Counted from the whole stretch's first letter, positions 1,881-33,090 are shown. The stretch: 63,411 nucleotides of DNA, filler included, from Octopus bimaculoides (GCF_001194135.2; 4 parts of 4 records of this genome joined end to end with filler, not necessarily neighbours in it); one strand, 5' to 3'. The notes: generated by a model from the letters alone, not told the origin. Translations and numbers: made by a program.

Positions 1881-1979
1881 AGTTCTTAAGTAACTATAAA
1901 TATAAGTTATATAATATCGTTAATTACATATATGTGTATATACGCGTATGTGTGTGTGTGTGTGCATATATATATATGC

Positions 1980-2018
<39 letters not shown>

Positions 2019-2170
2019 CATATACATATACATACATACATACATACATATATACATATATATATATATACATATATATATATACATATATATATATGCA
2101 CACACACGTATATACGCATATATGTAATTAATGATATTATATAACTTATATCTAGAGTTACTTAAGAACT
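1881..2170. repeat. Foldback inverted repeat with a TA/CA microsatellite core
   Basis: agttcttaagtaact..ataagttatataatatcgttaattacatatatg at 1881 onward is the near-perfect reverse complement of 2085-2170. Confidence 0.8.
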
Positions 2171-2238: not shown

Positions 2239-2497
2239 NNNNNNNNNNNNNNNNNNNNNNNNNNNNNNNNNNNNNNNNNNNNNNNNNNNNNNNNNNNNNN
2301 NNNNNNNNNNNNNNNNNNNNNNNNNNNNNNNNNNNNNNNNNNNNNNNNNNNNNNNNNNNNNNNNNNNNNNNNNNNNNNNNNNNNNNNNNNNNNNNNNNNN
2401 NNNNNNNNNNNNNNNNNNNNNNNNNNNNNNNNNNNNNNNNNNNNNNNNNNNNNNNNNNNNNNNNNNNNNNNNNNNNNNNNNNNNNNNNNNNNNNNNN

Positions 2498-2890
2498 TAC
2501 CAACCATATGGTTCCGGGTTCAGTCCCACTGCGTGGCACCTTGCGCAAATGTCTTCTATTATAGCCTCGGGCTGACCAAAGCCTTGTGAGTGGATTTGGT
2601 AGACGGGAACTGAAAGAAGCCCATCCTGTATATGTGTGTGTGCGTGTATGTGTATGTGTTTGTGTGTCTGTGTTTGTCTCTCCACCATCGCTTGACAACC
2701 GATGTTGGTGTCTTTACGTCCCCATAACCTAGCGGTTCGGCAAAAGTGACTGATAGAAATAAGTGCTAGGCTTGCAAAGAATAAGTCCTGGGGTCGATTT
2801 ATTCGACTAAAGGCGGTGTTCCAGCATGGCCGCAGTCAAATGACTGAAACAAGTAAAAGAATAAAAGAATTAAAGAATAAAAGAATATAC
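2498..2890 (+). mobile_element. tRNA-like SINE family A (internal TA/GT microsatellite)
   Basis: B-box-like ggttcagtccc, shared body cttgtgagtggatttggtagac and tail ggcggtgttccagcatggccgcagtcaaatgactgaaacaagtaaaag; 5' end lies in a gap. Partial copies at about 890-960(+), 3010-3145(+), 27965-28170(-), 29715-29870(-), 31140-31235(-), 44270-44410(+), 49690-49875(-), 58110-58160(-). Confidence 0.85.
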
Positions 2891-3204
2891 ACAATTACAT
2901 AGTAATGTTGATTACATTTCGTGATAATTGTAGAATCGGTAAACTTTCGCTATTCTGTTATTTTTTTATCCTTTATTCTTTTACTTCTTTCATTCTTTGG
3001 ACTGCGACCATGCTGGGGTTCGGCAAAAGAGACCGATAAAATAAGTACTAGGCTTACAAAGAATAAGTCCTGGGGTCGATTTGTTCGACTAAAGGCTGTG
3101 CTCCAGCATGGCCGCGGTCAAATGACTGAAACCAATAACAGGAAGCAAAAGAAATGTTTATCATTTTGGAAATGGTGAATAGCTTTTCTTTTAATAGTAT
3201 TTAG

Positions 3205-3570: not shown

Positions 3571-4539
3571 TTAAAAACATTTTATCTCGCAGAACTCCCA
3601 GAATTATTTCAAGGAACATATTTTGTAAAATATTTACATAGGAGATGTTGAATGGTGAAGAGTCTAGTAGAACATGCGAGGGTAGGGTGCTGCTATAATG
3701 TTCTGAGGAGTAGAGACTTGGGAAATAACGATAAAAAAAGACCGAGAAAGAGAGGGGAAATAAAGTCGAACAATTGTGGACGATTTTTAAAGAATTTTGG
3801 TCAATGGTGGTTTTAAATTTCATGTAGGGTTAGGTCATTAGTACCTTTAATGTAGAGCTGGAGGAGCGACTAATCTGTGACATATTAAATGTCTTATCCA
3901 GAAGATGACATCACTATCTCTTGTTTTACGCCGTGTCAAACGCTGATAAGCCGCAAACTCAGTTATTTTAGCTTAGCCTGAAAAAAATTTAGTTTATATT
4001 TCAAATATTTATCTCGTTAAGATTTGAAAAGTGCAGCATATGCTTATCACAAAATATACACTGCATAATAACGATAGCAATTATAAAATCAGAAATAGAA
4101 ATTAAATCCCAGTGGAAACTGTGACCCGATGATCAGTATAACATGTGAAAGAAATAAGGAAAGACGAACCTTAAATAATTATTTCAATGGATACATACAT
4201 AAAATACATACATACATGCATGCATACATATATACACAAATGTATGTATGTACGCATATGTGTATGTATAGTGATTACTTCAGCGCTCTAACAAACTGTT
4301 GCTGGAATTCAATTAAAAGGGCTCTGGATAAAAATGTTTGAAATATAAAACCTCAGAGAGAAATAGCAACAGTTTGATATATATAAAATGGTGAGTCACA
4401 GAATGTTCCAGAGGTTAACAGGAAGTTAAAACATGTACAGAATGAAAGAAGGGTAAATTAAGCTGCTAAGTGGATAAGAAAGAAAATTGAGAGAAAATGG
4501 CGGAGGGAAAAAGAGATGGGACAAAATGCAATAGAGAGT

Positions 4540-5673: not shown

Positions 5674-5718
5674 NNNNNNNNNNNNNNNNNNNNNNNNNNN
5701 NNNNNNNNNNNNNNNNNN

Positions 5719-5876: not shown

Positions 5877-7492
5877 AACAACAAACAAGATGAGGACAAA
5901 TATCCGTCAAATGTAAATAATGTAGATAATGAAGAAACTTTTATTTGAATAAAAAAAAAGGCCGTTAATGACTCAACCTCGATATATTGCACGTCTTGCC
6001 ATTGTAATATTATTCCAAGAATGAGAACTCTCTCAAATTATGAAAAAGTTGATAAGTACTTCATGAGAATCAAACCTCCAATCCAAATATTAACATCAAA
6101 GCCACAGCGGAGCTAATAGCTGTGAGAATGACCTTATGACTTGTCGTTGTGTAATACACACAGTTGAGCATCTGAGTGAAATAAGAGAATATGGAGAACG
6201 AAGTACACTGAGGAACATTTTAAAGATACAAAGGACCACATGATTTTGTCTGAGAAAATAAAACAGGAATTCGCCTACACTAAAAACTAATTATAAGATT
6301 TTCGAAATAATAAAAAAAATATGCTATCGTCGTTGATGATTCAACAGAACCGTTTGTGCATTTTAGTCCATGATTTTAAGCAATCAGAAAAATTTAATTT
6401 TTACTGAACTTCCAGGTTTACTTTCTGTGCAAAGTTTAACGGGTGAAAACTGTTTTCAGTTTGATTGACGAAGTTAAAATGTGTGGCTAGACTCTTATAA
6501 ATTGCTCTGATTTTGCATCAAGTTGTGTATTGGACATACATGCGGTCTAAGTTAAAAGCATACGCCATTCTCTTCGTGTGTTTGTTATCGATTGACAATA
6601 TATATTCAATAGGTTATATTGAAACTATAAGTAAATAATGAGTTTCTAAAGAACTCCTAAAAAGCCAGAATGAAATAAAGAGAAATACACAGAAATATCA
6701 TAGGCCACAGAAGTCTATTTTACTTCACTCTTATTCTGTAGGCTACGAAAATAAAGACAGTAACACCATATGAAGAAGTACAAGAATTTTATCAGAAAAA
6801 ATACAATGTTCTTTCTGGTTTTGGATTTGGTTTTTTTTAGTCTTTTTTTTCTTTTTTTTTTTTTGTAAATATCAGTAAAATTATTTCTCAAATCATATCA
6901 GCATCGGTTTCATATGAAGTTCTTCCAGAAAGTCAGTGAAACGCTGTAATTTTTCCAAAGATATTTTAATTCAAAACGAAAACTGCATATAATGTATCAC
7001 AAATTTCTTTGTATTACATTGTGAGGTTGTAANNNNNNNNNNNNNNNNNNNNNNNNNNNNNNNNNNNNNNNNNNNNNNNNNNNNNNNNNNNNNNNNNNNN
7101 NNNNNNNNNNNNNNNNNNNNNNNNNNNNNNNNNNNNNNNNNNNNNNNNNNNNNNNNNNNNNNNNNNNNNNNNNNNNNNNNNNNNNNNNNNNNNNNNNNNN
7201 NNNNNNNNNNNNNNNNNNNNNNNNNNNNNNNNNNNNNNNNNNNNNNNNNNNNNNNNNNNNNNNNNNNNNNNNNNNNNNNNNNNNNNNNNNNNNNNNNNNN
7301 NNNNNNNNNNNNNNNNNNNNNNNNNNNNNNNNNNNNNNNNNNNNNNNNNNNNNNNNNNNNNNNNNNNNNNNNNNNNNNNNNNNNNNNNNNNNNNNNNNNN
7401 NNNNNGTGTGAGGTTCAAAATGGTGGAAAGGAAAACAAAAACATAACGCAGAGACAGGTGAAAGAACAAAAAACAGGGTGTTGACGAAAGTG

Positions 7493-7749: not shown

Positions 7750-7922
7750 CAGTAGTAAGTTTTTAGATTTGTGTTTCAATTCTAAGCGAATCTGCTAACT
7801 CTGTCAAATTAACCAAGAAAATATAACATATTCCACTTCCTGTCAGGCTTATTCTTACGAACACAAAGGCATACATACTGACACGCATTCACACACATAC
7901 ACACACACATTTAAGCGTGTTC

Positions 7923-7965
<43 letters not shown>

Positions 7966-8019
7966 AGTGTATACATGTGTATAAGTCAGTGAATATATAT
8001 ATATATATATATGTAAATC

Positions 8020-8225: not shown

Positions 8226-8833
8226 NNNNNNNNNNNNNNNNNNNNNNNNNNNNNNNNNNNNNNNNNNNNNNNNNNNNNNNNNNNNNNNNNNNNNNNNNNN
8301 NNNNNNNNNNNNNNNNNNNNNNNNNNNNNNNNNNNNNNNNNNNNNNNNNNNNNNNNNNNNNNNNNNNNNNNNNNNNNNNNNNNNNNNNNNNNNNNNNNNN
8401 NNNNNNNNNNNNNNNNNNNNNNNNNNNNNNNNNNNNNNNNNNNNNNNNNNNNNNNNNNNNNNNNNNNNNNNNNNNNNNNNNNNNNNNNNNNNNNNNNNNN
8501 NNNNNNNNNNNNNNNNNNNNNNNNNNNNNNNNNNNNNNNNNNNNNNNNNNNNNNNNNNNNNNNNNNNNNNNNNNNAACCTATTAGTGTTTAGTGTTCAAT
8601 CACTTTTCTGTCTGGGATGGGTGTACTAAAACAGTCAGTTGATAGAAATGACAAATAACATTTTTATGTACGACATATGTGTACGTGTGTATGTGTGAGT
8701 GTATGTGTGTATGAAAGAGAGAGAGAGAGAAGAATAAAGTGAGAGAGAGAAAAAAGAGAGAGAGAGAGCTTGTGTGTGTATGTATACGCGAATGTATTAA
8801 CGCGAATTTCTTTTATTTATATATAAATACATT

Positions 8834-9167
8834 TCAACTTTCCGTTCGCGATTCAACTGTAATAGCGGCGTCTCCACTTCCTGTATCATTCGCTGATTCA
8901 AAAGCTTTATTAACACACCCATTATCTGACGTTGATAATTCTGTTGATTTATTCATGTCTGCCTCATTATTAGCAGAAGAGGGCGTCTTTTTGTCGATCT
9001 CAGACAGTGAGTCAAAATCCGTTTGGCAAGTCTTGGAGCAGAATTGTGTCGTATCGTTCACCGATTCCACGTCATCTGGCACTTGTTTGGCGTTATCGTA
9101 AATATTCTCGTCTGAGCTGTGCGCCTTAGGAGCAACTTTTTTGATGTTGTGTTTCCTTTTTCGTTTC
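8834..9167 (-). CDS. Cytoplasmic-tail exon of the same membrane protein
   Basis: Acceptor ttcaatatttcag|G. The first G completes TG|G (Trp) from the TM exon, giving ...YRW-KRKRKHNIKKVAPKAHSSDENIYDNAKQVPDDVES...GCVNKAFES...VESRTES*. 334 nt = 1 + 111 codons, stop-free until TGA at 8834-8836. Confidence 0.8.
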
Positions 9168-9334
9168 CTGAAATATTGAATATATTATAAATATTATAAA
9201 TATATTATAAATGGTAGAATAATGTGATTATTTTAAAGCGGATTTAGGAACAGCAGCTGAGTACATTTACCGTTGGTGTAAATAATGATTTTAAGGATCA
9301 AGTTGTCTGGGACTTCACAATCTATATATGCATA

Positions 9335-9780
9335 CAAGACACTAATTGTCCTCCGTACATTGTTTCTCATGAGCGCGGACACGGCTGACAAGACCAACAC
9401 GGGACAGCCAGATCTTGTGACCCCGAGAGCACTGAAAGGGATCCCGAACGACTTCTGCAAGGGGTTGATGCCGATGTCTCCTTCTTTCTTTATGCAATCT
9501 CCTGCGTTCGATTTCAAAGCGTTCTACGCCAGTGTAACACACGGACATTCATGCCTTCTGATTTACAGCCAGGGGCTCCGACCCATTGGGAAGGACGCCG
9601 CATAAAATGAGAGACTGCTTGAGAGAATCATGAAAACGAAACTTTGGACGTCCATGGGGCCTACTTTTCAGTCTCGATCTCCTTGAAGGGGACCCTCTTT
9701 GGGAGCCAGTTGCCCGGCATCCGAATCACATGGTAAACCCAATGAAGACGGCAAAGGATGCAGGCCTCAACGCTGGATAT
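9335..9780 (-). mobile_element. RTE (BovB-like) LINE 3' fragment
   Basis: LHWVYHVIRMPGNWLPKRVPFKEI..RPHGRPKFRFHDSLKQSL..FEIERRRLHKERRR..FQCSRGHKIWLSRVGLVSRVRAH. Confidence 0.8.
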
Positions 9781-9939
9781 ACACACATACATACACAGAC
9801 ACGCGCATACACATACATATACACATACATCAATACATACATATAAATACATACACACATATATATTCATACATGCATACATATATACATGCATACAAAC
9901 GTACATACATACATACATACATACATACATACATACATA

Positions 9940-10130
9940 CAAGTTCAGGTTTATACCTGTAATTATTGGGGCCCTGGGATATGTAACACGCTGCCTAAAT
10001 ACCAATCTTGAGAAATTAAGCTTCTCAAAACCAGNNNNNNNNNNAGCTAATTCGAAGACTACAGATCCAATCCATCACTGGAACTGTAAAAATCTGTAAA
10101 ACTTTCCAGAAGTTTATCATTTAAATATAT
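9940..10130 (+). mobile_element. R4/Dong-clade C-terminal fragment
   Basis: FIPVIIGALGYV..NLEKL..LQIQSITGTVKICKTF matches the end of the restriction-like endonuclease ORF. Confidence 0.7.
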
Positions 10131-10572
10131 ATGAGCATGTCTAGATATGCAACTATATGCATGAGAATACATCCATAAAACAAAACATACAAATGTGCTC
10201 ATATACATACATACATACATACATACATACATACACACAAGACTTTTCTCAAGTTCCTAATGTGAATTTGTCTGTGTTAACTAAATCTCAAAGATGGAGC
10301 CTTGTATCTTTGCCGGAAACCGGATCCCTCTTCAGTGGAACATTTATAATAATCAAAAAATAGAAGAGACATGCATACATACAAAAATACCCAGCTGTTG
10401 ATGTTGAAATTCCAACGAAGGAGCCTTGGATCTAGGTTAGAAACCAGCTCTTTCTCTATTGGCAAGAAATTTTAAAATAAGACTAAACAATGACATGCAC
10501 ACCCACATAAGACAGACAGACAGACTGATAGAGAGACAGATACACGTAAATATTAATAAAAAAGCTACTTAC

Positions 10573-10648
10573 CATCGATAAACGATAAGTATGATGATCA
10601 TTACAGCAATGAGAAGCAGCACTAGTATGGGAACAAGGATTTTGACGA
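10573..10648 (-). CDS. Transmembrane-helix exon of an unidentified single-pass membrane protein
   Basis: Minus strand: polypyrimidine acceptor ctcttctacttttgcttttcag|TC, 76-nt exon reading (x)-VKILVPILVLLLIAVMIIILIVYR-TG, then consensus donor |GTAAGT. Phase 1 in, phase 2 out. Confidence 0.85.
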
Positions 10649-11243
10649 CTGAAAAGCAAAAGTAGAAGAGATCGAAAGAGAGTTGACCAGAAGAAAAACT
10701 AACGTTTTGGCATTATTTCTCTCTCATACTAGCACATACACACACACACTCACACACACATGAATCTGCTAACTGAATATCTAAAACAGAGACGTCATCT
10801 TCATGAAAAACAACAGTCATGTTAGTGTTAATTAAATGCGGGGAGCATTTAAAAGCTAATGATGAGGTCATGCCACAATAATATTGAAGCATGTTCGAAA
10901 TTATCTTCTCCTTATTCATTCGCCAACAGTCCGCAAAAGTATACCTCCATTGTAACATATATATATATATATATATATATATANNNNNNNNNNNNNNNNN
11001 NNNNNNNNNNNNNNNNNNNNNNNNNNNNNNNNNNNNNNNNNNNNNNNNNNNNNNNNNNNNNNNNNNNNNNNNNNNNNNNNNNNNNNNNNNNNNNNNNNNN
11101 NNNNNNNNNNNNNNNNNNNNNNNNNNNNNNNNNNNNNNNNNNNNNNNNNNNNNNNNNNNNNNNNNNNNNNNNNNNNNNNNNNNNNNNNNNNNNNNNNNNN
11201 NNNNNNNNNNNNNNNNNNNNNNNNNNNNNNNNNNNNNNNNNNN

Positions 11244-11550
11244 GGTTAGAGCATTCGATTCACGATAGTAAGGTCGTGAGTTCAATTCTCGGCGACGCGT
11301 TGTGTCCTTGAAAAGACACTTTATTTCACGTTGCTCCCGTCCACTCAGCTGGCAAAAATGAGTTGTACCTGTATTTCAAAGGGGCCAGCCTTGTCACACT
11401 CTGTGTCACGTTGAATCTCCCCGAGAACTACCTTACGGGTACACGTATCTGTGGAGTGCTCAGCCACTTGTACGTTAATTTCACGAGCAAGCTGTTCCGT
11501 TGATCGGATCAGCTGGGACCCTCGTCGTTGTAACCGACGGAGTGCTCCTA
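11244..11550 (+). mobile_element. tRNA-like SINE family C
   Basis: ggttagagcattcg..gagttcaattctcggc (A/B-box-like), gtccttgaaaagacactttatttcacgttgct..ccactcagctggcaaaaatgag; second copy at 61815-62040. Confidence 0.8.
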
Positions 11551-11733
11551 TTATTTAAGATATTTTAAAGTGATTTTGTATTATTCTGTGTATGTAATAC
11601 GACAATATTGTGGCAGTATATTGAAAAAAAAAAGAATGAAATCATAAATTTATCATAAATAAACTACTTTATCGGAGTGTCATATTTCGATTAACGGTAT
11701 AATTGTTAATGTTTTGGTCAAGACAATTGTCAC

Positions 11734-11906
11734 TGTTGTGTCGACGCTCCCAGGCGAAGAAGTAGGACTCCCAAGACATAAATAGAGGTAGTCTGGCCGA
11801 AGTAGGAGTGTTAAGTAGCAATTGAGTAGCAGTCTAGTAGCAGTTGTGTAGCGGTTGAGTAGAGATCATCCGAAGGTGCTAGATAGCAGTAGCTTGAGAC
11901 ATAACA
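11734..11906. mobile_element. Solo LTR, 173 bp
   Basis: TGTTGTGTC...GACATAACA inverted termini (8/9 match) flanked by an exact 5-bp TSD GTCAC (11729-33 and 11907-11). Confidence 0.8.
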
Positions 11907-12264
11907 GTCACATAGGATGTAAAACTTGTATTTCTAACTATAGTTATATATTTATCCGCGATCAGCCTCCAGGGGGACGCACCACAGCTATAGTTTCGGA
12001 AATCATCCACTCATTGCAAATAGCCTAGAGGCGGATAAAATTGAACATACCATTAATCTTTCTTGGAGTATTTTTTCCTTTAGAGAATAAATAAATAAAT
12101 GTGTCTTAAAGGTAACACAGTCGTGAAATAATGTAAATCATGTGTCAGGCGTGGGTTATGTAAGCTGGAGGGGAGGACGTGCAATGAGATGATGTCACCT
12201 TCCAACATAATGCTGACGAATTGAAACCAATTTTAGTTTATACTAACATTTTGTCAATATATGA

Positions 12265-12550
12265 AGGCACAGGCGTGACCGTGCAGTAAGAAGCTTCCTT
12301 CCCAACCACATGGTTCCGGGTTCAGTCCCACTGCGTGGCACCTTGGCCAATTGTCTTCTGCTATAGCCTTGGGCCAACCAAAGCCTTGTGAGCCTAAAAG
12401 AAGCCCATCGTATACGTACGTGCGCGGTGTGGTGTGTTTGTGCCCCCGTAAGCCCGATAGAATAAGCACCAGGTTTTTTAAAATAAATACTGGGGTCGAT
12501 TCATTTTGCTAAGAATTCTTCGAATCTGTGCCCCAGCATGGTCGCAGTCT
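12265..12550 (+). mobile_element. SINE family A copy (internally deleted)
   Basis: aggcacaggcgtgaccgtgcagtaagaagc..ggttcagtcccactgcgtggcacc..ccccagcatggtcgcagtc. Confidence 0.8.
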
Positions 12551-12658
12551 TTTTACAGTAAATTATTTCTAATAACAATTATTGTGTCTAACGGATTTAT
12601 GTCCACTCGGCTCCCTAACCTAAGACACTCGGTCTCCCATTCGAAATAGGGATATAAT

Positions 12659-19924: not shown

Positions 19925-20580
19925 AAAGGTTAAACCATCCATCTCCGGCGACTTCGCCATCATGCAGTCCGTTATAGCTTCCTGTATTTTGTCAGCTGTT
20001 ATCGGCTTTTCGTAGAACTCCGCATCCCCAGCCGAGAGCTGCGGTAGACCATAAAGTTAGGAGGTAATGTCCACGACCCCGTCACCGGTCCACCGTCTAA
20101 CGCAAATAGTTGAGCCAAGTGCCACTGAAAAGCGCACACTGAAGAACTGAGTGGTACACAACCCTTCCGATTTGTTAAAAAGTCATCTCATATATCACGT
20201 GAGTTTCAAAACAGAGCCGGACGCTGTCCGTTGGCTGTTTTGCGTTGATGGGGCACTGGTTCAGGCAGCATTGTGTCCTGTATATTGTTATTGTGGGAGA
20301 GGTAGTGTCTGAGGGTGTAGCCTCGTCTCGTGATTCTGACAGGGAGGTCAGTCCTTTTGACGTCGTTCCTTATCTTGCTCCCTTGTATAGAAAGTTGATA
20401 TATATCCATTTATTACCTCTCTGTTTCTCCTTTTTCTGTTTGTCTACTTTCCTCTTTCCTTCTGTCGTTGTTGAAGTTGAAGTTATTTGTTGTTGGAGGC
20501 GGTGTTGCTAATGCCGCTGTTGTTGTCGCAGTGACTGTTGTTACCGTTGTTCGTGTTGTTGTGATGGTGATTGTTATTGT
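19925..20580 (-). mobile_element. Internally deleted Tx1/L1-like LINE (ORF1-like Thr-rich part plus RT-proximal part)
   Basis: GLPQLSAGDAEFYEKPITADKIQEAITDCMMAKSPEMDG matches the PIT..EI..AI..KSPG.DG motif; upstream Thr-rich tract resembles 26100-26460. Confidence 0.6.
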
Positions 20581-24248: not shown

Positions 24249-25149
24249 TGCGTGCATGCGTGCGTACGCGCGCCTTTATTTGCAAGTGGTCATTCCAAGG
24301 TCTTTACTCAGTTGTGCGTTGAAAGAAGAAATTTGAACTCTATCACGCACACACACACACACACAACACACACAGATGCATACATACATGCATACATACA
24401 TACATACATACGTACATTTCCACTGAAATGACGGGATTGCTAATATGGACTGGTGTCGCTAAAGTGGAAAATTCTGTAGCTACTTTTGGGACTGGTAGCA
24501 AATTGCTTTTCTTAAATAAATTGGTATCGCTATGGTTATTCATCATTAAAGAGAATCCATTACAAGTCAAGATGTTTGTAACTTGAAAGACAACCTCTTT
24601 ATGCAAGATTGCTGGAAAGGGAGGCCCCCCCCCCTGCATTGAGTGCTCCATATCCTTCATAGAAAGGCGTCCCGATGTCAAGAGTGACCTAGGGAAATTA
24701 CTCCCGTGGCACCCACACAAATTCCGGCTCTGCACATGTGTACAGTCGGACGCATACATCACAGAACATGCTCATTCACGTGCTCTTTAATTTATAATAT
24801 TTATTCACTCCCTTGGGTGTAGTGACCGACATGTCAAAACCCTCACCAGCAACGACTACTCAAATGGGTTGAAGGATTGTCATCTGAGTGGTGTAAAGGG
24901 GTCTTCCATCAGGAGTAGGGAATACCGACAAACAGTGAATGCAGCGACGCGCTGGGACAGCGCATGCCCTCACGAAAAATTCATTGAGGCATCGAAAGCC
25001 GGTTTCGTTTAAGTATTTCAGTTCAATTAAATATTTCAGTAAATGAAGAATTTATGTTGTATGGTATTAGTATACCTTTTTTCGTCTTTTCCTGTGACCA
25101 ATGTGAATTATTTCTCCTGGATCTATTCCATCTCAATCACAGATTTTTT

Positions 25150-26080
25150 TTTTGATTTTTTTAAACTAAGCAGCTTGAAACTTCGAATACTGGTAGAATT
25201 TCTCACGTAGAACACGGTTTACTCTGAACGTTTTTGACATAATTTCCTATTTTAGAAGTTATTTCGTGTTAAAGTTGTATTTGGATAATTTCAACCAATC
25301 AACGACGTGTATTCGGTTGAAGAAGCTAATCGAAGAGGAACAACTTCTGGGTCATCTCTACTAAATCTCACCACTCTGTTCGAAGAATTAACCCCATAGA
25401 GCAACGAGTTCGCAGCTAGCTTTTTTGTTGTTGACGTATATGTAGTTTCAAAATGCCTTATTTTACCACTATTGTTATTGTCATGATTTATCTCACTATA
25501 ATTAACAACAAACACATTTCGTCAATATAAAAGTCTTTATTAAGGCGGCGAACTGGCAGAAACGTTAGCACGCCGGGCGAAATGCTTAGCGGTATTTTGT
25601 TTGCTGTTACGTTCTGAGTTCAAATTCCGCCGAGGTCGACTTTGCCTTTCATCCTTTCGGGGTCGATTAAATAAGTACCAGTTACGCACTGGGGTCGATG
25701 TAATCTTGTTTGTCCCCTCTATGTTTAGCCCCCTGTGGGCAATAAAGAAATAATTATAAAAGTCTTTATTAGATTAGAAATAACATTATCGAAACATGAA
25801 GGTAAAACAAAACAAATAGCGGCTTATACACCGGAAAATACGGTCATTGTAGTGGCAGTGACAAGTTCGCTCACTGATTGCTAGTTGATAGTGTATAAGG
25901 GAGGGAAAGGGTAAGGAATAGACGGTGCTGACTAGAAATGAAGGAAGGATAAAAGTGACGAATGGAACAGAGTGGTGACATTTAGTAGAGATGACCCAGA
26001 AGTTGTTCTTCTTAGATTACTATCGCAAACAGCAGTAGCTTTCATCAACCGAATACACGTCGTTGATTGGTTGGAATTAC
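25150..26080. mobile_element. Second, truncated copy of the 19045-19733 MITE family, with a SINE B inside
   Basis: aagttatttcgtgttaaagttgt..taatttcaaccaatcaacgacg matches the 19180-19240 region; 25285-25380 is inverted relative to 25965-26078. Confidence 0.7.
25540..25755 (+). mobile_element. tRNA-like SINE family B
   Basis: taaggcggcgaactggcagaaacgttagcacgccggg..gagttcaaattccgcc..ccctgtgggcaataaagaaa; other copies at 51775-51995(+) and 58160-58410(-). Confidence 0.85.
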
Positions 26081-26089
26081 CTAAAAATA

Positions 26090-27960
26090 CGACACCACCA
26101 TCACCAACAACAACAGCAACAACAACAATGACTCACGTACCACAAGTTTTGACCATCTCGCACCGATTCCTAAGAGAATGACATAATGAAAGAAAAACGG
26201 GCCGAAAATGGCGAATAGTCTCCGATGGAGGAAAGTGAAAGAGAAGAGTACAGAGCATCACTGCAAGGATACCACAAAAACAATAACAAACACAGAAACC
26301 ACAATTACAGCCCATTTCACAATCACTCCAATAACAACATCAACAACAGTAATATCAACATCATCATCATCATCAACAAGAAGAAAATACACAAACACAA
26401 TGACAACCAAAACTGAAACTCAAAAAGTACAACAAAGCAAACTACACAAAAAGTATCCATCAACTTCATTGTTGTAAATACTCAAATCATAAAAACGAAA
26501 CTAAGAAAGATTTTGAAGATTTAATCCTCAAAAAAAAACAAAAAAAACGACGGACAGATTACTAATAAAAACGTCATCAGACGTATACCAAACAATTTGG
26601 GAAAAATTCTCGGCTACTGTGGGAATTTTAAAAAAGACTATGCAAAACACTTTTATGAGAGCCTTTTAGAAAACATTCGCCCCAAGAGAGGTCAGGAACA
26701 TTAGGACTTCGCGAAAATTAAAGTTAGTGATCTCTCCTTTCTCTCTCCAACAAACATGGTTGTGCTGTGTGTGGGGTGTGTGAATGTGTGTCACCTGGGC
26801 TTAGCTTAGAAACATGGTCACTTGTTCAACGACCTCAGTTCGCTTGACATACGTATAGTGGTACCCAGCGCTGGACTAACCATTTAGCAAAATAAGCACT
26901 TCTTAGGTCATCAGGGGAAGGAGAGGGCACCACAGAAATGGTAAATTGTTTACGGCACAAAAGAAATCACTTTAAATTGGCTGAAATAATATTCGGGATG
27001 CCTTTACCTCTACTAAATATAGATGCAGATGTGTTACCTAAGACTAATTTTGAGGATCTAATCAAAGACTTTGCAATTCAAAAAAGTAGGAGGAAACTTT
27101 TCAAATATAAATAAAGTGGAGGTATACAAAAATAAACATTATTTTTCCTCTTACTGTTTTGTCTCGTTTTGAAAAATAAAAATTTATTTTATGGTTTATT
27201 ATTGTTTATATTTTGAATTACATGATATTTTATGGGGGCACCAAAATCTTTTAAGTGCTTAGGGCCTCGATAGGTCTTAATCCAAGCGCTGGTGGTACCC
27301 ATCAGCGAGACAAGGATTTCTGATGCGCAAGCATTGGCGCTTATTTTTGATGATCGGGCGGCAGGGTAGCAGTGCTATTACAGAAATTCTTAGAGCTTAA
27401 AGTACGGGCAATCTTTATGGTTCTTGGCGGTAAGTTGGTGTTCCAGGACGTGAACGGCAACGGTCCCCATAGAGGCTATGAAATATTCCTGGGAAAATCT
27501 CGCTCTTTAGTACTAGGGGTGGTGGTGCTGGAATTGTATTTTGGATGCACGGAACGATTTGTGACATTGCAGAAGGGAACGCAAAAGCCCGAAAATCTGC
27601 TCAGGAACTTCCAGTTGCCTAACAGGTACTAACTAGATTTTCCTGATGTGACAGAGTAGACATGTAGCAACCACAGTGGGTCATCCAGATCGTATCTAGA
27701 TGGAGTATTTATTAAGTCAGCGGATAGAGATAGTGTAGGATGTTTATATTTCGAACTGGTCGGGTACACAGACCGCAAATTTGTGATCTGCTCGGTCAAT
27801 TTAGACAGTGGCCCGATTGCTAGAGGCTGAACGCGTTCTTACCGGCACACAAAGACTACAGAGACCGGATTAATGAACTAATTAGGTAGCAGTTGACGGG
27901 TGGAGGCAATCCCCAACAACCAATGATGGGTCATCCTGAAGAGGGCGATTCGAGTAGAAT
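26090..27960 (+). mobile_element. Tx1/L1-like LINE: ORF1 remnant plus ORF2 APE endonuclease, decayed
   Basis: MVVLCVGCVNV..HLFNDLSSLDIRIVV(P)ISETRIS, later SRSYLDGVFI..YTDRKFV (APE termini); split by a hAT insertion. Confidence 0.7.
26866..27291 (+). mobile_element. Non-autonomous hAT element, 426 bp, with a transposase C-terminal remnant
   Basis: TIR cagcgctggactaa / ttaatccaagcgctg; exact 8-bp TSD GTGGTACC (26858-65 and 27292-99); internal LPLLNIDADVLPKTNFEDLIKDFAIQKSRRKLF resembles the hAT dimerisation-domain end. Confidence 0.9.
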
Positions 27961-28590: not shown

Positions 28591-29856
28591 ATATCACAAT
28601 AACAATTTGCAGCAGTCTTCACTACAAAATCAAGCTTTTCCATTTTGTCTAGGTGGGAAAATTTCTAAATCCTTTGCTGAACAAAAGAATCATTTTCAGT
28701 CACATAACACATAGACTATCTTGACCATCTTCTAGTAATTTTAAACTGTAAATATTTTACTCTATATTACTGAAATGTGCGTGTACTGTCAGTGGTGATG
28801 TTGAGAAAAGTCATACTCGATTAATGAGTCGATAGTCATCATCATCCATCGGTATGTACATACATATATGACGAGCTATTTTTCAATTCCACCAAATCCA
28901 CTTAAAAGGCTATAATTGAAGACACTGGCCAAAATTGTCACACAATGGGACCCAACCCGGAACTATGTCGTCAGAAAGCAAACTTCTTACCACACAGCTA
29001 CGCGGGTACCTATGTATACGTCTCTTATTTTCACTGTATACCGTGTATATTTCATTCAATTTAAACCCAACCACCACCACACTTTATTTCTGTCTTTGTG
29101 TTGTCCACCTTATCCGTCGGCAAATAAAAGAAATCATCATCTTCGTCGTCGTCGTCGTTGTTGTTATTGTTATTACTATTATTATTATTAAAATGGCCAT
29201 TAATAATGATTGCATTAGTATCATTAGTTTCCAGTCAATCTCAGATTCATTTTTACCTGCTCAAGAACGTACTTTCAAAGTAATAATACTTATTTGAGTT
29301 AGCCATTGTTCATTTTGCTACCAGTTCAAACAAGTCAGAGAACAGGCAGTGTTATGCTTTCGTTAACAATATCTTTCGCTTTGGCTTAACAATGGCTACC
29401 AGTAGATACAGTTAATGTCCTATAAACACAAACGAGTGCGGTCGGTACAGATACCGGCCGACGAATCCAGTTTGTCGAAATGTTTTCAAGGTCAACATTT
29501 AAGTTTATGTGTGTTCGTAGTGGACAACAATAAGTGCTTGAAGATACTATGGTTCTGCAAGAAAGAAGGAGAAAGAAATGATGTCTGAAATTTTTTGAAT
29601 ATTGATGTTAACAAAACTAGTTCTTTTTTAGTGCAATGATTCTTAAGGAGGGGAGTGTTGTGAGGTTTGAATAAAGGACGAACAAACTGCGGTGTTTAAT
29701 AACATTAACTTGGTCCTTTTATCTTTTACTTGTTTCAATCATTAGATGCTAGGTCACCGCTTTGAAGAATTTTTAGTCGAATGAATCGACCCCAGTACTT
29801 TTTAAAGCCTGACACTTATTCTATCGTTCTCTTTTGCCAAACCGGTTGTCAAGCGG

Positions 29857-30720: not shown

Positions 30721-31379
30721 TCATCAATCATCATCATCATCATCTATAACCTTTCTGATCCCACCCTTCATATAGATTAACACAAACATGAGTGCACAGC
30801 GCAGAAGTCTTTATATCAGTGTTTCTCAACTATGTTTTACCTATGGAGCCCTTAGATTCCTATTTTACTCGTATGGACCTTCCTAGCCATTCGATGTTTA
30901 AAAGGATGTACCTCACACAGAGTGGACCAAATAGAACAGGAGGAAACACATAGAATGAAGAGTCACTGAAGAATTCACAGATGTGTGACGAAAAATTTCC
31001 AGACAATGGACATAAGACAAAATAGGAACAATTATAAATGAGTGAAGAACGAATATATAGCGCGTGTATTTATTTGGCAAGAAAAATAAAGAAAAAAATG
31101 ACCATCCCGAAATATAACAATATGCATATATATGTGTGTGTATGTTCTTTTATGTTCTTTTACTTGTTTCAGTCATTTGACTGCGGCCATGCTGGAGCAC
31201 CGCCTTTAAAAGGTTTTAGTCGAAGAAATCGTAGCTGTTAATGAGTTGTGTTTGCTTTCGTGTTTAAGTGCCTTAAAGCTAAACTGCATAGGGTTTCAAT
31301 TCAACATAAAGGATTAAATTCTGATCTGCCTGCCTTTATACTGGCTAAAATTTGCACACATATATTGACTTTTTCAGAT

Positions 31380-33090
31380 ACCTCGGAAATATGTTCAAAC
31401 GACTAATCGTGGGGCTGCAGAGGACGATTTAAGTAGGGCCAGAGATCGTGTCAGGGAAGGATGCAGTATCCGTGCTGCTGCTAAAGATTTCAATACATTA
31501 AGAATGACACTAAAAAGATAAATAGACAAATGCAATCAACAAAATGAAGAGCAAAACGAAGTGCTTGAGTACAAAAATTGCAGGAAAATATGACATTTTC
31601 ATCAGAGATAGAAGCTGAGTTATCGATTCACATAATGATATTAGCCGAGCAGTTCCAAGAAACTCACACGAAATAAATGCCATGAGTTGATAGTGGAATA
31701 TGCATTAAGAAACAATGTTACGGTCCCTGATTCTTGGTAACAAAACGGAATAACTGGCGAGTATTTTAGATGTCTTTTAAAGAAAGAAACCATCTAGCAA
31801 TTCGAATACCAGAGGATACATCTCTTGCTAGAGCAACTGCGTTCAATTGCTATAACATTGACAAGTTTTACGACAACTTAAAGAGTGTTATGGACCTGCA
31901 CAAATTTGAATGCCACAATTATAACGCAGATGAAACTGGGTGTACAACTATGCAGCAACCTGAAAATGTCGTTGCTGCATAGGGAGTGAAACAAGTAGGG
32001 TCTATAACTTCCGGTGAGAGAGGACAACTTGTAGCAGTTGTGTATGCAGTTATTGCAGCAGGAAGTATTGTTCCACCACTGCTGATCTTCCTATGAAAAA
32101 ACTATAGAGATTATTTTATCAAAGGTGGGCCTGCAGGATGTATCGGAGGAGCCAATTCCAGTGAAGGGATTAATGTTTGTGACTTATTTAAAACACTTTA
32201 TAACCTACACCAGGTGCAGCAAAGAGAAGAAAGTGTTGTTAATTTTGGACAATCACAAAACTCATGTGTCTCTTGCAGCTATTGACTTGGCCGAGAAAAA
32301 TAGGGTGATATCATTAACAATCTCACCTCACACAAGCTACAAGCTCCAACCATTGGATGTGAGCTGCTATAAGTTATTCAAGACGGCATATAGTCGAGTG
32401 GTTGATAACGGGATGCGTTTCCACCCCGGAAAGTCGATTACAATATATGACATTCCTGAGTTTGTTTCACATGCTCAGATACATGGTCTTACTGCTCAAA
32501 ACATTATCTATGGGTTTCAACGAACGAGAATTTATCCCTTTAATCAAGATGAGTTCTGTAAAACAGAGTTAACACCTGCAGTAGTAACAGATGGAGATCT
32601 TCCAACATCATTTTATGAAAACCAAGCAGATATTCTCAAATCAAGTCTTAAAGAAACACCAATTTCTAATTCAATGCCAGAGTCACCCAACATTTCATAG
32701 AAACCATCAGCTTCCACCGAAACTGCTACTTCGAATGTTGAACGAAGTGGAGTTCTCAACGTTTTAAAATAAAACACAAATCATTTATATGTAGTTATGT
32801 GTTTCATCTTTGCGTACAATCAATTATAATATCACTTATCCCAAGTTCTCCCGTATCCAACTCTCCCCTATACATGTCCCAACTCTCCCCACCCCCTGCG
32901 AGGGTTGGGTCAAACCACCACCCTTTAAAAAGCATGCTTTTGTTGCTTCAGTTTACACCCATTTGAAACTATATCCCTGCGTTACAAGTCTATGAATATT
33001 ACAAGTTGGTAAAGAATTCTTTCTTATGCACAGAAAGTCTGTATCATATTGAAATGTAAGAAATGACCCAGCTCTCCCAAGCTTGCCCTA
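31380..33090 (+). pseudogene. pogo/Fot1-like (DDE_1) transposase relic with 3' terminal region
   Basis: PRKYVQTTNR, SLARATAFN, YNADETG, KQVGSITSGERG, LLILDNHKTH, PHTSYKLQPLDV; gtcccaactctccccacc terminal motifs at about 32860-32895 and 33070-33090. Confidence 0.85.

What the first reader, a model, noticed from the sequence alone, without database searches (positions are those of the whole stretch)
8834..10648. Hidden host gene: orphan single-pass membrane protein recovered by splicing two exons
Seen: a 76-nt exon with textbook splice sites encodes an uninterrupted hydrophobic run (ILVPILVLLLIAVMIIILIV). Its split TG|G codon joins in frame to a 334-nt exon 1.4 kb away that begins KRKRKH. Established: hydrophobic helix plus basic cluster is the type I stop-transfer signature, and a phase-1/phase-2 TM exon is a common receptor gene architecture. 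Inference: the acidic Ser/Thr tail carries ENIYDN (possible phosphotyrosine docking site) and GCVNKAF (NxxF-like sorting motif), suggesting a signalling or adhesion receptor. I cannot name the family because the ectodomain exons were not identified.
Basis: partly seen in the sequence, partly recalled or inferred. Interest (0 to 1): 0.7.

Follow-up and report, generated by a model that had tools for sequence, protein, structure and literature searches.

The report
Last two exons, annotated octopus gene
The two spliced exons are real, but they are simply the membrane-anchor and tail exons of an already annotated, uncharacterised Octopus bimaculoides gene (LOC106873288), so the finding is correct but ordinary.

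Summary
On the minus strand, a 76-nt exon (10648-10573, cag|...|gtaagt) joins in frame through a split TG|G codon to a 334-nt terminal exon (9167-8834, TGA). The 135-aa product is 100% identical to residues 322-456 of RefSeq XP_014776080 (Octopus bimaculoides LOC106873288, "uncharacterized protein"; UniProt A0A0L8H3C5, "CUB domain-containing protein"). The window is that chromosome's sequence, and the annotated CDS ends at window base 8834.

Orthologues in Octopus sinensis and Argonauta hians keep the same 76-nt TM exon, the same splice positions and phases, and the same stop. Changes are mostly synonymous: pN 0.24 against pS 0.76.

The assembly gap (10035-10044) lies inside the intron. The gap-free O. 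sinensis intron has 9 nt there with colinear flanks, so the gap does not affect the frame.

The full protein (453-461 aa) is a type I membrane glycoprotein. It has a signal peptide in the orthologues, a 10-Cys N-terminal domain, a beta-sandwich (CUB-like, unproven), a helical stalk, the TM helix, a KRKRKH cluster and a disordered tail. The tail contains conserved islands E[NT]IYDN and DNGCVNKAF.

The gene is not hidden and not a transposon, and its function remains untested. It is already known, so interest is low.

The parts
10573..10648 (-). Penultimate coding exon (76 nt) of LOC106873288. It starts in phase 1 (T|TC = Phe321 of XP_014776080.1) and ends in phase 2 (TG|G = Trp). It encodes the transmembrane helix VKILVPILVLLLIAVMIIILIVYRW.
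   Evidence: sequence. (KD 3.63, reached by 0/300 simulations). (100% identity to P0002 residues 322-346). (76-nt exon with the same borders in A. hians and O. sinensis). (AF2 helix 320-353, the best pLDDT of the model).
10649..10670 (-). 3' splice site of the upstream intron: polypyrimidine tract ctcttctacttttgcttttc followed by ag.
   Evidence: The same AG position is found in A. hians (tatttcag|TC) and O. sinensis (ttttttttag|TC).
10567..10572 (-). 5' splice site gtaagt of the last intron.
   Evidence: O. sinensis has GTAAGT and A. hians has GTAAGC at the same position.
9168..10572 (-). Last intron, 1405 nt as assembled. It contains the 10-N assembly gap (10035-10044), (ATAC)n microsatellites (9779-9941, 10203-10239), and a stop-interrupted retroelement-like ORF remnant (about 9345-9780).
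   Evidence: It is colinear with the gap-free O. sinensis intron (1951 nt), which has 9 nt at the gap position. The A. hians intron is 1293 nt with no N.
8834..9167 (-). Last coding exon (334 nt including stop TGA 8836-8834). It encodes the juxtamembrane basic cluster KRKRKHNIKKV and a 111-aa acidic, Ser/Thr-rich, predicted disordered cytoplasmic tail with conserved islands ENIYDN, QFCSK..QTDF and DNGCVNKAF.
   Evidence: (100% identity to P0002 residues 347-456). (the annotated CDS of XP_014776080.2 ends at L002 20462 = window 8834). (conservation). (pN 0.285 against pS 0.723 versus A. hians). (pLDDT <50 for residues 355-456).

Best explanation
Window 8834-10648 (minus strand) holds the last two coding exons of the annotated Octopus bimaculoides gene LOC106873288 (XP_014776080; UniProt A0A0L8H3C5).

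Shown:
- The 76-nt exon encodes the single transmembrane helix.
- The terminal exon encodes the stop-transfer cluster KRKRKH and a disordered cytoplasmic tail.
- The four upstream coding exons lie outside the piece.
- The gene is conserved, under purifying selection, in O. sinensis and Argonauta hians.

Inferred architecture: signal peptide, a 10-Cys N-terminal domain, a 4-Cys beta-sandwich domain, a helical stalk, the TM helix and the tail. This makes a type I membrane glycoprotein of about 430 mature residues. Three N-glycosylation sequons are positionally conserved, and all three lie N-terminal to the TM.

Inferred mechanism (not tested):
- It acts as a cell-surface receptor or adhesion molecule.
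- The disulfide-rich ectodomain binds an extracellular ligand, possibly a glycan or protein, as lectin-like and CUB-like modules do.
- The tail works through short linear motifs. The conserved Tyr in IYDN fits the pY-x-N consensus of Grb2/Drk-type SH2 domains (established knowledge, not tested here).
- The invariant DNGCVNKAF is a second docking or sorting site.
For: Identity:
- The only hit of the 135-aa peptide among 1.84 billion representatives is P0001 (A. hians). E is 5.5e-31, and the match is contiguous across the junction and ends at the same residue.
- P0002 = XP_014776080.1 is 100% identical over residues 322-456.
- The window is 100% identical to GCA_001194135.2 CM046602.1, and the CDS end coincides with window 8834.

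Real gene, not a prediction artefact:
- Exon length (76 nt), splice positions, phases and the TGA are conserved in three species.
- Against A. hians, pN is 0.243 and pS 0.763.
- Octopus-Octopus differences by codon position are 5/3/11.
- Both exons are single copy, while the neighbouring SINE-like repeats are multicopy.

Topology:
- KD 3.63 for the TM, and the AF2 helix.
- Hydrophobic N-termini in the O. sinensis and A. hians proteins.
- 14 invariant ectodomain Cys.
- Three conserved sequons, all before the TM; tail sequons are not conserved.

Motifs: conserved islands in a tail that is otherwise only about 50% identical.
Against: - No transcript or junction-read evidence could be examined. 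All the full-length proteins are computational gene models.
- None of the three O. bimaculoides models has a convincing signal peptide, and their N-termini disagree. No match to the O. sinensis signal-peptide exon exists within 10 kb upstream in L002. The 5' end of the gene in this species is therefore unresolved.
- Domain assignment is weak. Pfam finds neither CUB nor Gal_lectin at E<=10. The AF2 models are poor, with mean pLDDT 44.6 and 55.2. Foldseek returns only generic jelly-roll/beta-sandwich matches, none at E<=0.001.
- The signalling role of the tail motifs rests on conservation plus textbook consensus only.
Confidence: 0.9

Rival explanations
1. The gene is real, but the protein is not a signalling receptor. 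It would be a structural, adhesive or trafficking membrane protein (for example a lectin-like cargo or matrix receptor). On this reading the conserved tail islands are endocytic or sorting signals, or protein-protein contacts unrelated to phosphotyrosine.
For: The tail is acidic, Ser/Thr-rich and predicted disordered. The beta-sandwich also resembles GOLD and other non-signalling jelly rolls in Foldseek.
Against: Nothing distinguishes this reading from the signalling one with the available tools. IYDN does fit pY-x-N. No canonical YxxPhi or dileucine endocytic motif is conserved in the tail (inspection).
Confidence: 0.35
2. The two 'exons' are a chance hydrophobic run and a chance open frame. 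On this reading, automated pipelines stitched them into a false gene model that was then propagated between octopod annotations.
For: A 116-codon open frame is not unusual in this AT-rich, microsatellite-rich sequence. All supporting proteins are predictions. No Pfam domain is found.
Against: - The TM hydrophobicity was never reached in 300 simulations.
- Identical splice positions, exon length, phases and stop are found in three independently assembled genomes, including Argonauta.
- pN is far below pS, with synonymous sites saturated.
- The ectodomain is 74-97% identical between species, with 14 invariant Cys.
Confidence: 0.02
3. The peptide belongs to, or derives from, a transposable element.
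For: The intron carries a retroelement-like ORF remnant on the same strand (9345-9780), and the window is full of interspersed repeats.
Against: Both exons are single copy in about 100 kb of three loci, whereas the SINE-like repeats recur many times. No TE domain is found in Pfam. The peptide's only relatives are the orthologous single-copy genes.
Confidence: 0.01

Closest known systems
XP_014776080.1/.2, uncharacterized protein LOC106873288 (Octopus bimaculoides); UniProt A0A0L8H3C5 'CUB domain-containing protein'
   Same: This is the same gene. The spliced peptide is 100% identical to residues 322-456. The window is 100% identical to the chromosome record, and the CDS ends at the same base.
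   Different: Nothing differs in the region of the finding. The three public models differ from each other only in their N-terminal exon, which lies outside the window.
Orthologues: XP_036369800.1 LOC118768096 (Octopus sinensis) and Ahia01_000168000 (Argonauta hians)
   Same: They share the six-coding-exon layout (mapped exon by exon in A. hians), the 76-nt TM exon, the splice phases and the stop position. YRWKRKRKHNIKKV, IYDN, QFCSK, QTDF and DNGCVNKAF are conserved.
   Different: Over the 135 residues, 9 differ in O. sinensis and identity is 53-56% in A. hians. Both have a clear hydrophobic signal-peptide exon, 16 kb and 9.7 kb upstream of exon 2, which the O. bimaculoides models lack.
CUB-domain type I receptors with tyrosine-motif tails (e.g. 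neuropilins, DCBLD2/ESDN, CDCP1)
   Same: The overall plan is the same: signal peptide, disulfide-bonded beta-sandwich ectodomain, single TM, basic juxtamembrane cluster, and a disordered tail with a conserved Tyr motif. The segment C..G..IYLKSPGYPY..C.C.I resembles the N-terminal CUB signature (my reading). UniProt's automatic name says CUB. CUB structures (TSG-6, neuropilin-1, spermadhesin, meteorin) appear among the Foldseek matches.
   Different: Pfam CUB (PF00431) does not match at E<=10. The Foldseek matches are weak (best E 1.6e-3) and mixed with GOLD domains, viral capsids and other jelly rolls. The second CUB disulfide is absent. No sequence homology to any of these receptors was detected.
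SUEL / rhamnose-binding lectin (Gal_lectin, PF02140) domains, as in latrophilin/LAT-1 and EVA-1
   Same: The N-terminal Cys-rich domain ends with KCHGKSQCWFIVDW..NIDKCPTS...YMTAEYLC. This resembles the C-terminal half of RBL domains. The best PDB sequence hit of this domain is the C. elegans LAT-1 lectin domain 8suf_E.
   Different: That hit has E = 0.34 and covers only 27 residues. It is not reproduced with a three-species profile. Pfam Gal_lectin does not match. The domain has 10 Cys rather than the usual 8 (my recollection). AF2 did not fold it. This is a lead only.

Membership tests
LOC106873288 orthogroup (octopod uncharacterised type I membrane protein) | Sequence identity of the spliced product to the annotated protein | tested here: met
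   135/135 identical to P0002 residues 322-456.
LOC106873288 orthogroup (octopod uncharacterised type I membrane protein) | Same genomic locus and same CDS coordinates as the annotated gene | tested here: met
   The window is 100% identical to CM046602.1 (reversed). L002 position = 29296 minus window position. The exons fall at L002 18648-18723 and 20129-20462, and the gene call ends at 20462.
LOC106873288 orthogroup (octopod uncharacterised type I membrane protein) | Exon-intron structure conserved in orthologues | tested here: met
   76-nt TM exon, AG/GT positions, phases 1 and 2, and TGA are conserved in A. hians and O. sinensis.
Type I single-pass membrane proteins | One hydrophobic TM helix followed by a cytoplasmic basic cluster (positive-inside) | tested here: met
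   KD 3.63 over 19 residues, reached by 0/300 simulations. KRKRKH follows directly. AF2 helix 320-353.
Type I single-pass membrane proteins | Cleavable N-terminal signal peptide | tested here: inconclusive
   The O. sinensis and A. hians proteins have hydrophobic N-termini, judged by inspection. The O. bimaculoides models lack one, and no matching exon lies within 10 kb upstream. No signal-peptide predictor was available.
Type I single-pass membrane proteins | Extracellular hallmarks confined to the N-terminal side (conserved Cys, conserved N-glycosylation sequons) | tested here: met
   14 invariant Cys lie before the TM. The 3 positionally conserved sequons all lie before the TM, and tail sequons are not conserved.
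CUB domain (Pfam PF00431) | Match to the family profile at or above the curated threshold | tested here: not met
   No CUB hit at E<=10 in any of 5 members.
CUB domain (Pfam PF00431) | CUB beta-sandwich fold | tested here: inconclusive
   AF2 gives a beta-sandwich at pLDDT 55-76. Foldseek lists CUB structures among many unrelated jelly rolls, none at E<=0.001.
SUEL/RBL lectin domain (Pfam PF02140 Gal_lectin) | Match to the family profile or to a solved member | tested here: not met
   No Pfam hit. The LAT-1 RBL domain is the top PDB hit, but at E 0.34, and it is lost with the profile.
Transmembrane adaptor / syndecan-type families (SIT, SCIMP, Syndecan, TMEM154) | Pfam score at or above the curated cut-off | tested here: not met
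   All hits score 13-20 bits against cut-offs of 25-32, and they cover only the TM plus the basic cluster.
Transposable-element protein | TE protein domain or multicopy dispersion | tested here: not met
   No TE domain is found. The exons are single copy in L001-L003. A whole-genome copy count was not possible.

The most novel reading that the evidence does not exclude
LOC106873288 and its orthologues could be a taxonomically restricted (octopod-only) receptor family. Its Cys-rich ectodomain would belong to no described domain family, and its tail would signal through a conserved pY-x-N site. That would make it a lineage-specific cell-surface receptor invented in cephalopods.

The evidence does not exclude this:
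- The tail has a single cluster of relatives among 1.84 billion representatives.
- No Pfam or PDB relative of the ectodomain was found.

Caveat: the ectodomain was only searched with the word-indexed tool, which demonstrably missed an exact match once. Relatives in squids or other molluscs may therefore exist.
Probability: 0.25. Interest if true: 0.35.

Novelty: already known. Interest (0 to 1): 0.12.

Why it matters
The finding matters little beyond quality control. It shows that a tool-free reader recovered a correct two-exon splice, to the base, from raw cephalopod sequence.

Two things are mildly useful:
1. The gene is an uncharacterised, apparently octopod-restricted type I membrane protein with conserved tail motifs. 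It is a candidate for anyone studying lineage-specific receptors in cephalopods.
2. The O. bimaculoides gene models appear to lack the true signal-peptide first exon that the O. sinensis and A. hians models have.

Tried and rejected
1. The search for homologous proteins with the 135-aa peptide found nothing. This was a false negative of the word index: the identical protein P0002 is in that database. The 'no homologue' reading was dropped after the exhaustive HMMER search.
2. Six-frame Pfam scans of the 2 kb upstream of the TM exon (10649-12658) and of long ORFs elsewhere found no domains. tblastn of the A. hians protein against the window matched only the two exons. The ectodomain exons are therefore not in the piece.
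3. Exon B's ORF length was tested as evidence and rejected as not significant.
4. The Rfam hits (mir-297, mir-466 and others) all lie on (ATAC)n/(TG)n microsatellites and score far below gathering thresholds, so they were rejected. No tRNAs were found.
5. Profile and single-sequence searches of PDB sequences with the whole protein and with each ectodomain segment gave nothing significant.
6. Two AF2 predictions had mean pLDDT 44.6 and 55.2. Two Foldseek searches returned generic jelly-roll matches only.
7. A profile search with the two-species alignment added no further relatives.
8. An exact look-up of P0002 on contigs found nothing on record.
9. A literature search for the four accessions found no papers.
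10. An AATAAA 17 nt after the stop (8817-8812) was considered as a poly(A) signal. It is not conserved in O. sinensis, so it is not claimed.

Full report
**1. What is in the sequence**

- A 76-nt segment, 10648-10573, is preceded by a pyrimidine tract and cag, and followed by gtaagt.
- A 334-nt segment, 9167-8834, is preceded by ...atatttcag and ends in TGA (8836-8834).
- Skipping the first two bases of the first segment (intron phase 1) and joining TG|G (phase 2) gives a 135-residue product: VKILVPILVLLLIAVMIIILIVYRW|KRKRKHNIKKVAPKAHSSDENIYDNAK...DNGCVNKAFESANDTGSGDAAITVESRTES*.
- The intervening 1405 nt contain (ATAC)n microsatellites, a stop-riddled retroelement-like ORF remnant, and the 10-N assembly gap.

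**2. Is it more than chance?**

- The hydrophobic 19-mer scores Kyte-Doolittle 3.63. This is the highest value in all six frames once trinucleotide and dinucleotide microsatellites are set aside.
- None of 300 order-2 Markov simulations of the window reached it (mean 2.56, sd 0.20).
- By contrast, the 116-codon open frame containing the second exon is unremarkable. 90% of simulations have an open frame at least that long, and another 116-codon frame exists at 3829-3482.
- The sequence alone therefore made the TM exon convincing and the tail exon only plausible. Homology settled the matter.

**3. Identity**

- A first word-indexed protein search found nothing. This later proved to be a false negative.
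- An exhaustive HMMER scan of 1.84 billion cluster representatives returned one hit, P0001, a 453-aa protein. E is 5.5e-31, and query residues 1-134 align to its residues 317-452.
- The BLASTP alignment runs straight across the proposed junction (VVYRWKRKRKHNIKKV) and stops at the same C-terminus.
- Searching with P0001 identified it as Argonauta hians Ahia01_000168000. It also brought in P0002 = XP_014776080.1, 'uncharacterized protein LOC106873288 [Octopus bimaculoides]'.
- The spliced peptide is 135/135 identical to P0002 residues 322-456.
- The 90% cluster also holds three other entries:
  - XP_014776080.2
  - UniProt A0A0L8H3C5, automatically named 'CUB domain-containing protein'
  - XP_036369800.1, LOC118768096 of Octopus sinensis
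- The contig look-up for XP_014776080.2 returned GCA_001194135.2 CM046602.1. The window is 100% identical to it (reverse strand; L002 position = 29296 minus window position).
- The finding is therefore the last two coding exons of an already annotated gene.

**4. The assembly gap**

- The gap at 10035-10044 lies in the intron between the two exons.
- The chromosome-level record keeps the same Ns.
- The gap-free O. sinensis locus aligns colinearly through it. It has 9 nt (TTCTCCTCT) where O. bimaculoides has 10 N, and the flanks are nearly identical.
- The A. hians intron (1293 nt) has no N either.
- All five protein sequences read ...YRWKRKRKH... with nothing inserted.
- The two sides are continuous, no exon hides in the gap, and the reading frame does not depend on it.

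**5. Independent support that the gene is real**

In A. hians (L001) the gene has six coding exons:
- a signal-peptide exon
- a 122-residue Cys-rich exon
- a roughly 119-residue exon
- a 51-residue exon
- a 76-nt TM exon (24628-24703)
- a 340-nt last exon (25997-26336)

In O. sinensis (L003) the TM exon is 29042-29117 (76 nt, AG...GTAAGT) and the last exon is 31069-31402 (334 nt). The acceptor AG, the donor GT, both intron phases and the TGA fall at homologous positions in all three species.

Selection signature:
- Between O. bimaculoides and A. hians, synonymous sites are saturated (pS 0.76) while pN is 0.24. For the TM plus juxtamembrane part, pN is 0.14 and pS 0.84.
- Between the two Octopus species, the 19 differences fall 5/3/11 by codon position.

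Copy number: both exons occur once in the roughly 100 kb of the three loci, whereas the SINE-like repeats of the window recur many times. This excludes the chance-ORF and transposon readings for practical purposes.

**6. What the protein is**

- *N-terminus.* The O. sinensis and A. hians N-termini are hydrophobic and signal-peptide-like.
- *Ectodomain.* It is about 290 residues, 74-97% identical between species, with 14 invariant cysteines. Ten are in the first domain and four in the second.
- *Stalk and TM.* A predicted helical stalk is followed by the TM helix, which is the most confident part of the AF2 model.
- *Tail.* The basic cluster is followed by a tail with pLDDT <50.
- *Glycosylation sequons.* Three N-x-S/T sequons are positionally conserved, all before the TM. 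The sequons in the tail are not conserved. This fits an extracellular N-terminus and a cytoplasmic tail.
- *Domain naming could not be settled.*
  - Pfam finds only sub-threshold TM-plus-basic-cluster matches (Syndecan, SCIMP, SIT, TMEM154). It finds no CUB or Gal_lectin.
  - PDB sequence searches are empty apart from an E = 0.34 match of KCHGKSQCWFIVDW..DKCP to the rhamnose-binding lectin domain of C. elegans LAT-1. That match is not reproduced with a profile.
  - The AF2 models are poor, with mean pLDDT 44.6 and 55.2. The second domain is a beta-sandwich at pLDDT 55-76.
  - Foldseek returns CUB domains (TSG-6, neuropilin-1, spermadhesin, meteorin) mixed with GOLD domains, viral capsids and other jelly rolls. 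None has E <= 0.001.
  - 'CUB-like beta-sandwich preceded by a possibly lectin-like Cys-rich domain' is therefore a lead, not a result.

**7. How it probably works**

Shown: it is a conserved single-pass type I membrane protein gene. Inferred: it is a cell-surface receptor or adhesion molecule.
- The tail is only about 50% identical between Octopus and Argonauta.
- It nevertheless contains sharply conserved islands: YRWKRKRKHNIKKV, SS[DN]E[NT]IYDN, QFCSK, QTDF and DNGCVNKAF. This is the pattern expected of short linear motifs in a disordered tail.
- IYDN fits the pY-x-N preference of Grb2-type SH2 domains (textbook knowledge, not tested).
- A non-signalling role (adhesion, sorting) is an equally open rival.

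**8. Comparison with the known, and novelty**

- The locus is a member of, in fact identical to, an annotated gene, so the novelty class is 'already known'.
- No paper mentions any of its accessions, and no described family claims it.
- Relatives were found only in octopods. However, the ectodomain was searched only with the word-indexed tool that missed an exact match once. Lineage restriction is therefore not demonstrated.

**9. Verdict**

- The 'hidden' label is wrong, because the gene is annotated.
- The functional suggestions are plausible but untested.
- Interest is low.

Noticed in passing
window 2500-2590 and 12302-12392 (wider element about 12254-12510): There are two 90%-identical copies of a SINE-like interspersed repeat (CCAACCA[TC]ATGGTTCCGGGTTCAGTCCCACTGCGTGGCACCTTG...). 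Many diverged copies occur in the O. bimaculoides and O. sinensis loci and weaker ones in A. hians. ARAGORN finds no intact tRNA.
   Followed up: partly
window 2757-2859, 3039-3141, with a shorter relative at 914-955: A second short interspersed repeat family (...GGCGGTG.CCCAGCATGGCC.CAG...) is partly arranged as an inverted pair (2821-2868 / 2969-3016). More than ten copies occur in L002 and L003.
   Followed up: partly
window about 9345-9780, minus strand (inside the last intron): Stop-interrupted ORF pieces (…CRLHWVYHVIRMPGNWLPKRV…, …HGRPKFRFHDSLKQSL…, …FQCSRGHKIWLSRVGLVSRVRAHEKQ) resemble, from my memory, the C-terminal tail of non-LTR retrotransposon ORF2 proteins. Pfam finds nothing. The remnant is present at the orthologous site in O. 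sinensis (88% identity), so the insertion predates the split of the two Octopus species.
   Followed up: partly
L002 10001-10468 (outside the window); L003 3001-3078; L001 10001-10072: The three public O. bimaculoides protein models of this gene have three different N-termini, and none is signal-peptide-like. O. sinensis and A. hians have a separate signal-peptide exon 16 kb and 9.7 kb upstream of exon 2. No match to it lies within 10 kb upstream in O. bimaculoides, so the first exon is probably mis-annotated there.
   Followed up: partly
window 1924-2125, 4188-4276, 7871-7970, 9849-9938, 10154-10228: All Rfam 'microRNA precursor' matches (mir-297, mir-466, mir-3149, mir-1277 and others) sit on (ATAC)n/(TG)n/(AT)n microsatellites and score about half of their gathering thresholds. 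They are artefacts of low-complexity palindromic repeats.
   Followed up: yes
window 2239-2497, 5674-5718, 7033-7405, 8226-8575, 10984-11243: There are five further assembly gaps in the piece, 45-373 N each. The chromosome-level record GCA_001194135.2 carries the same gaps, so it was scaffolded from the same contigs rather than re-sequenced here.
   Followed up: partly
tool behaviour: The word-indexed protein search returned no hit for a 135-aa query that is 100% identical to the C-terminus of a protein in its own database. 'No hit' from that tool on a partial (C-terminal) query is not evidence of absence.
   Followed up: yes
L001 1-2974 (Argonauta hians): The upstream neighbour of the orthologue in A. 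hians is an RNA polymerase II second-largest-subunit (Rpb2) gene. No neighbouring gene is called within 10 kb of the O. bimaculoides gene.
   Followed up: no
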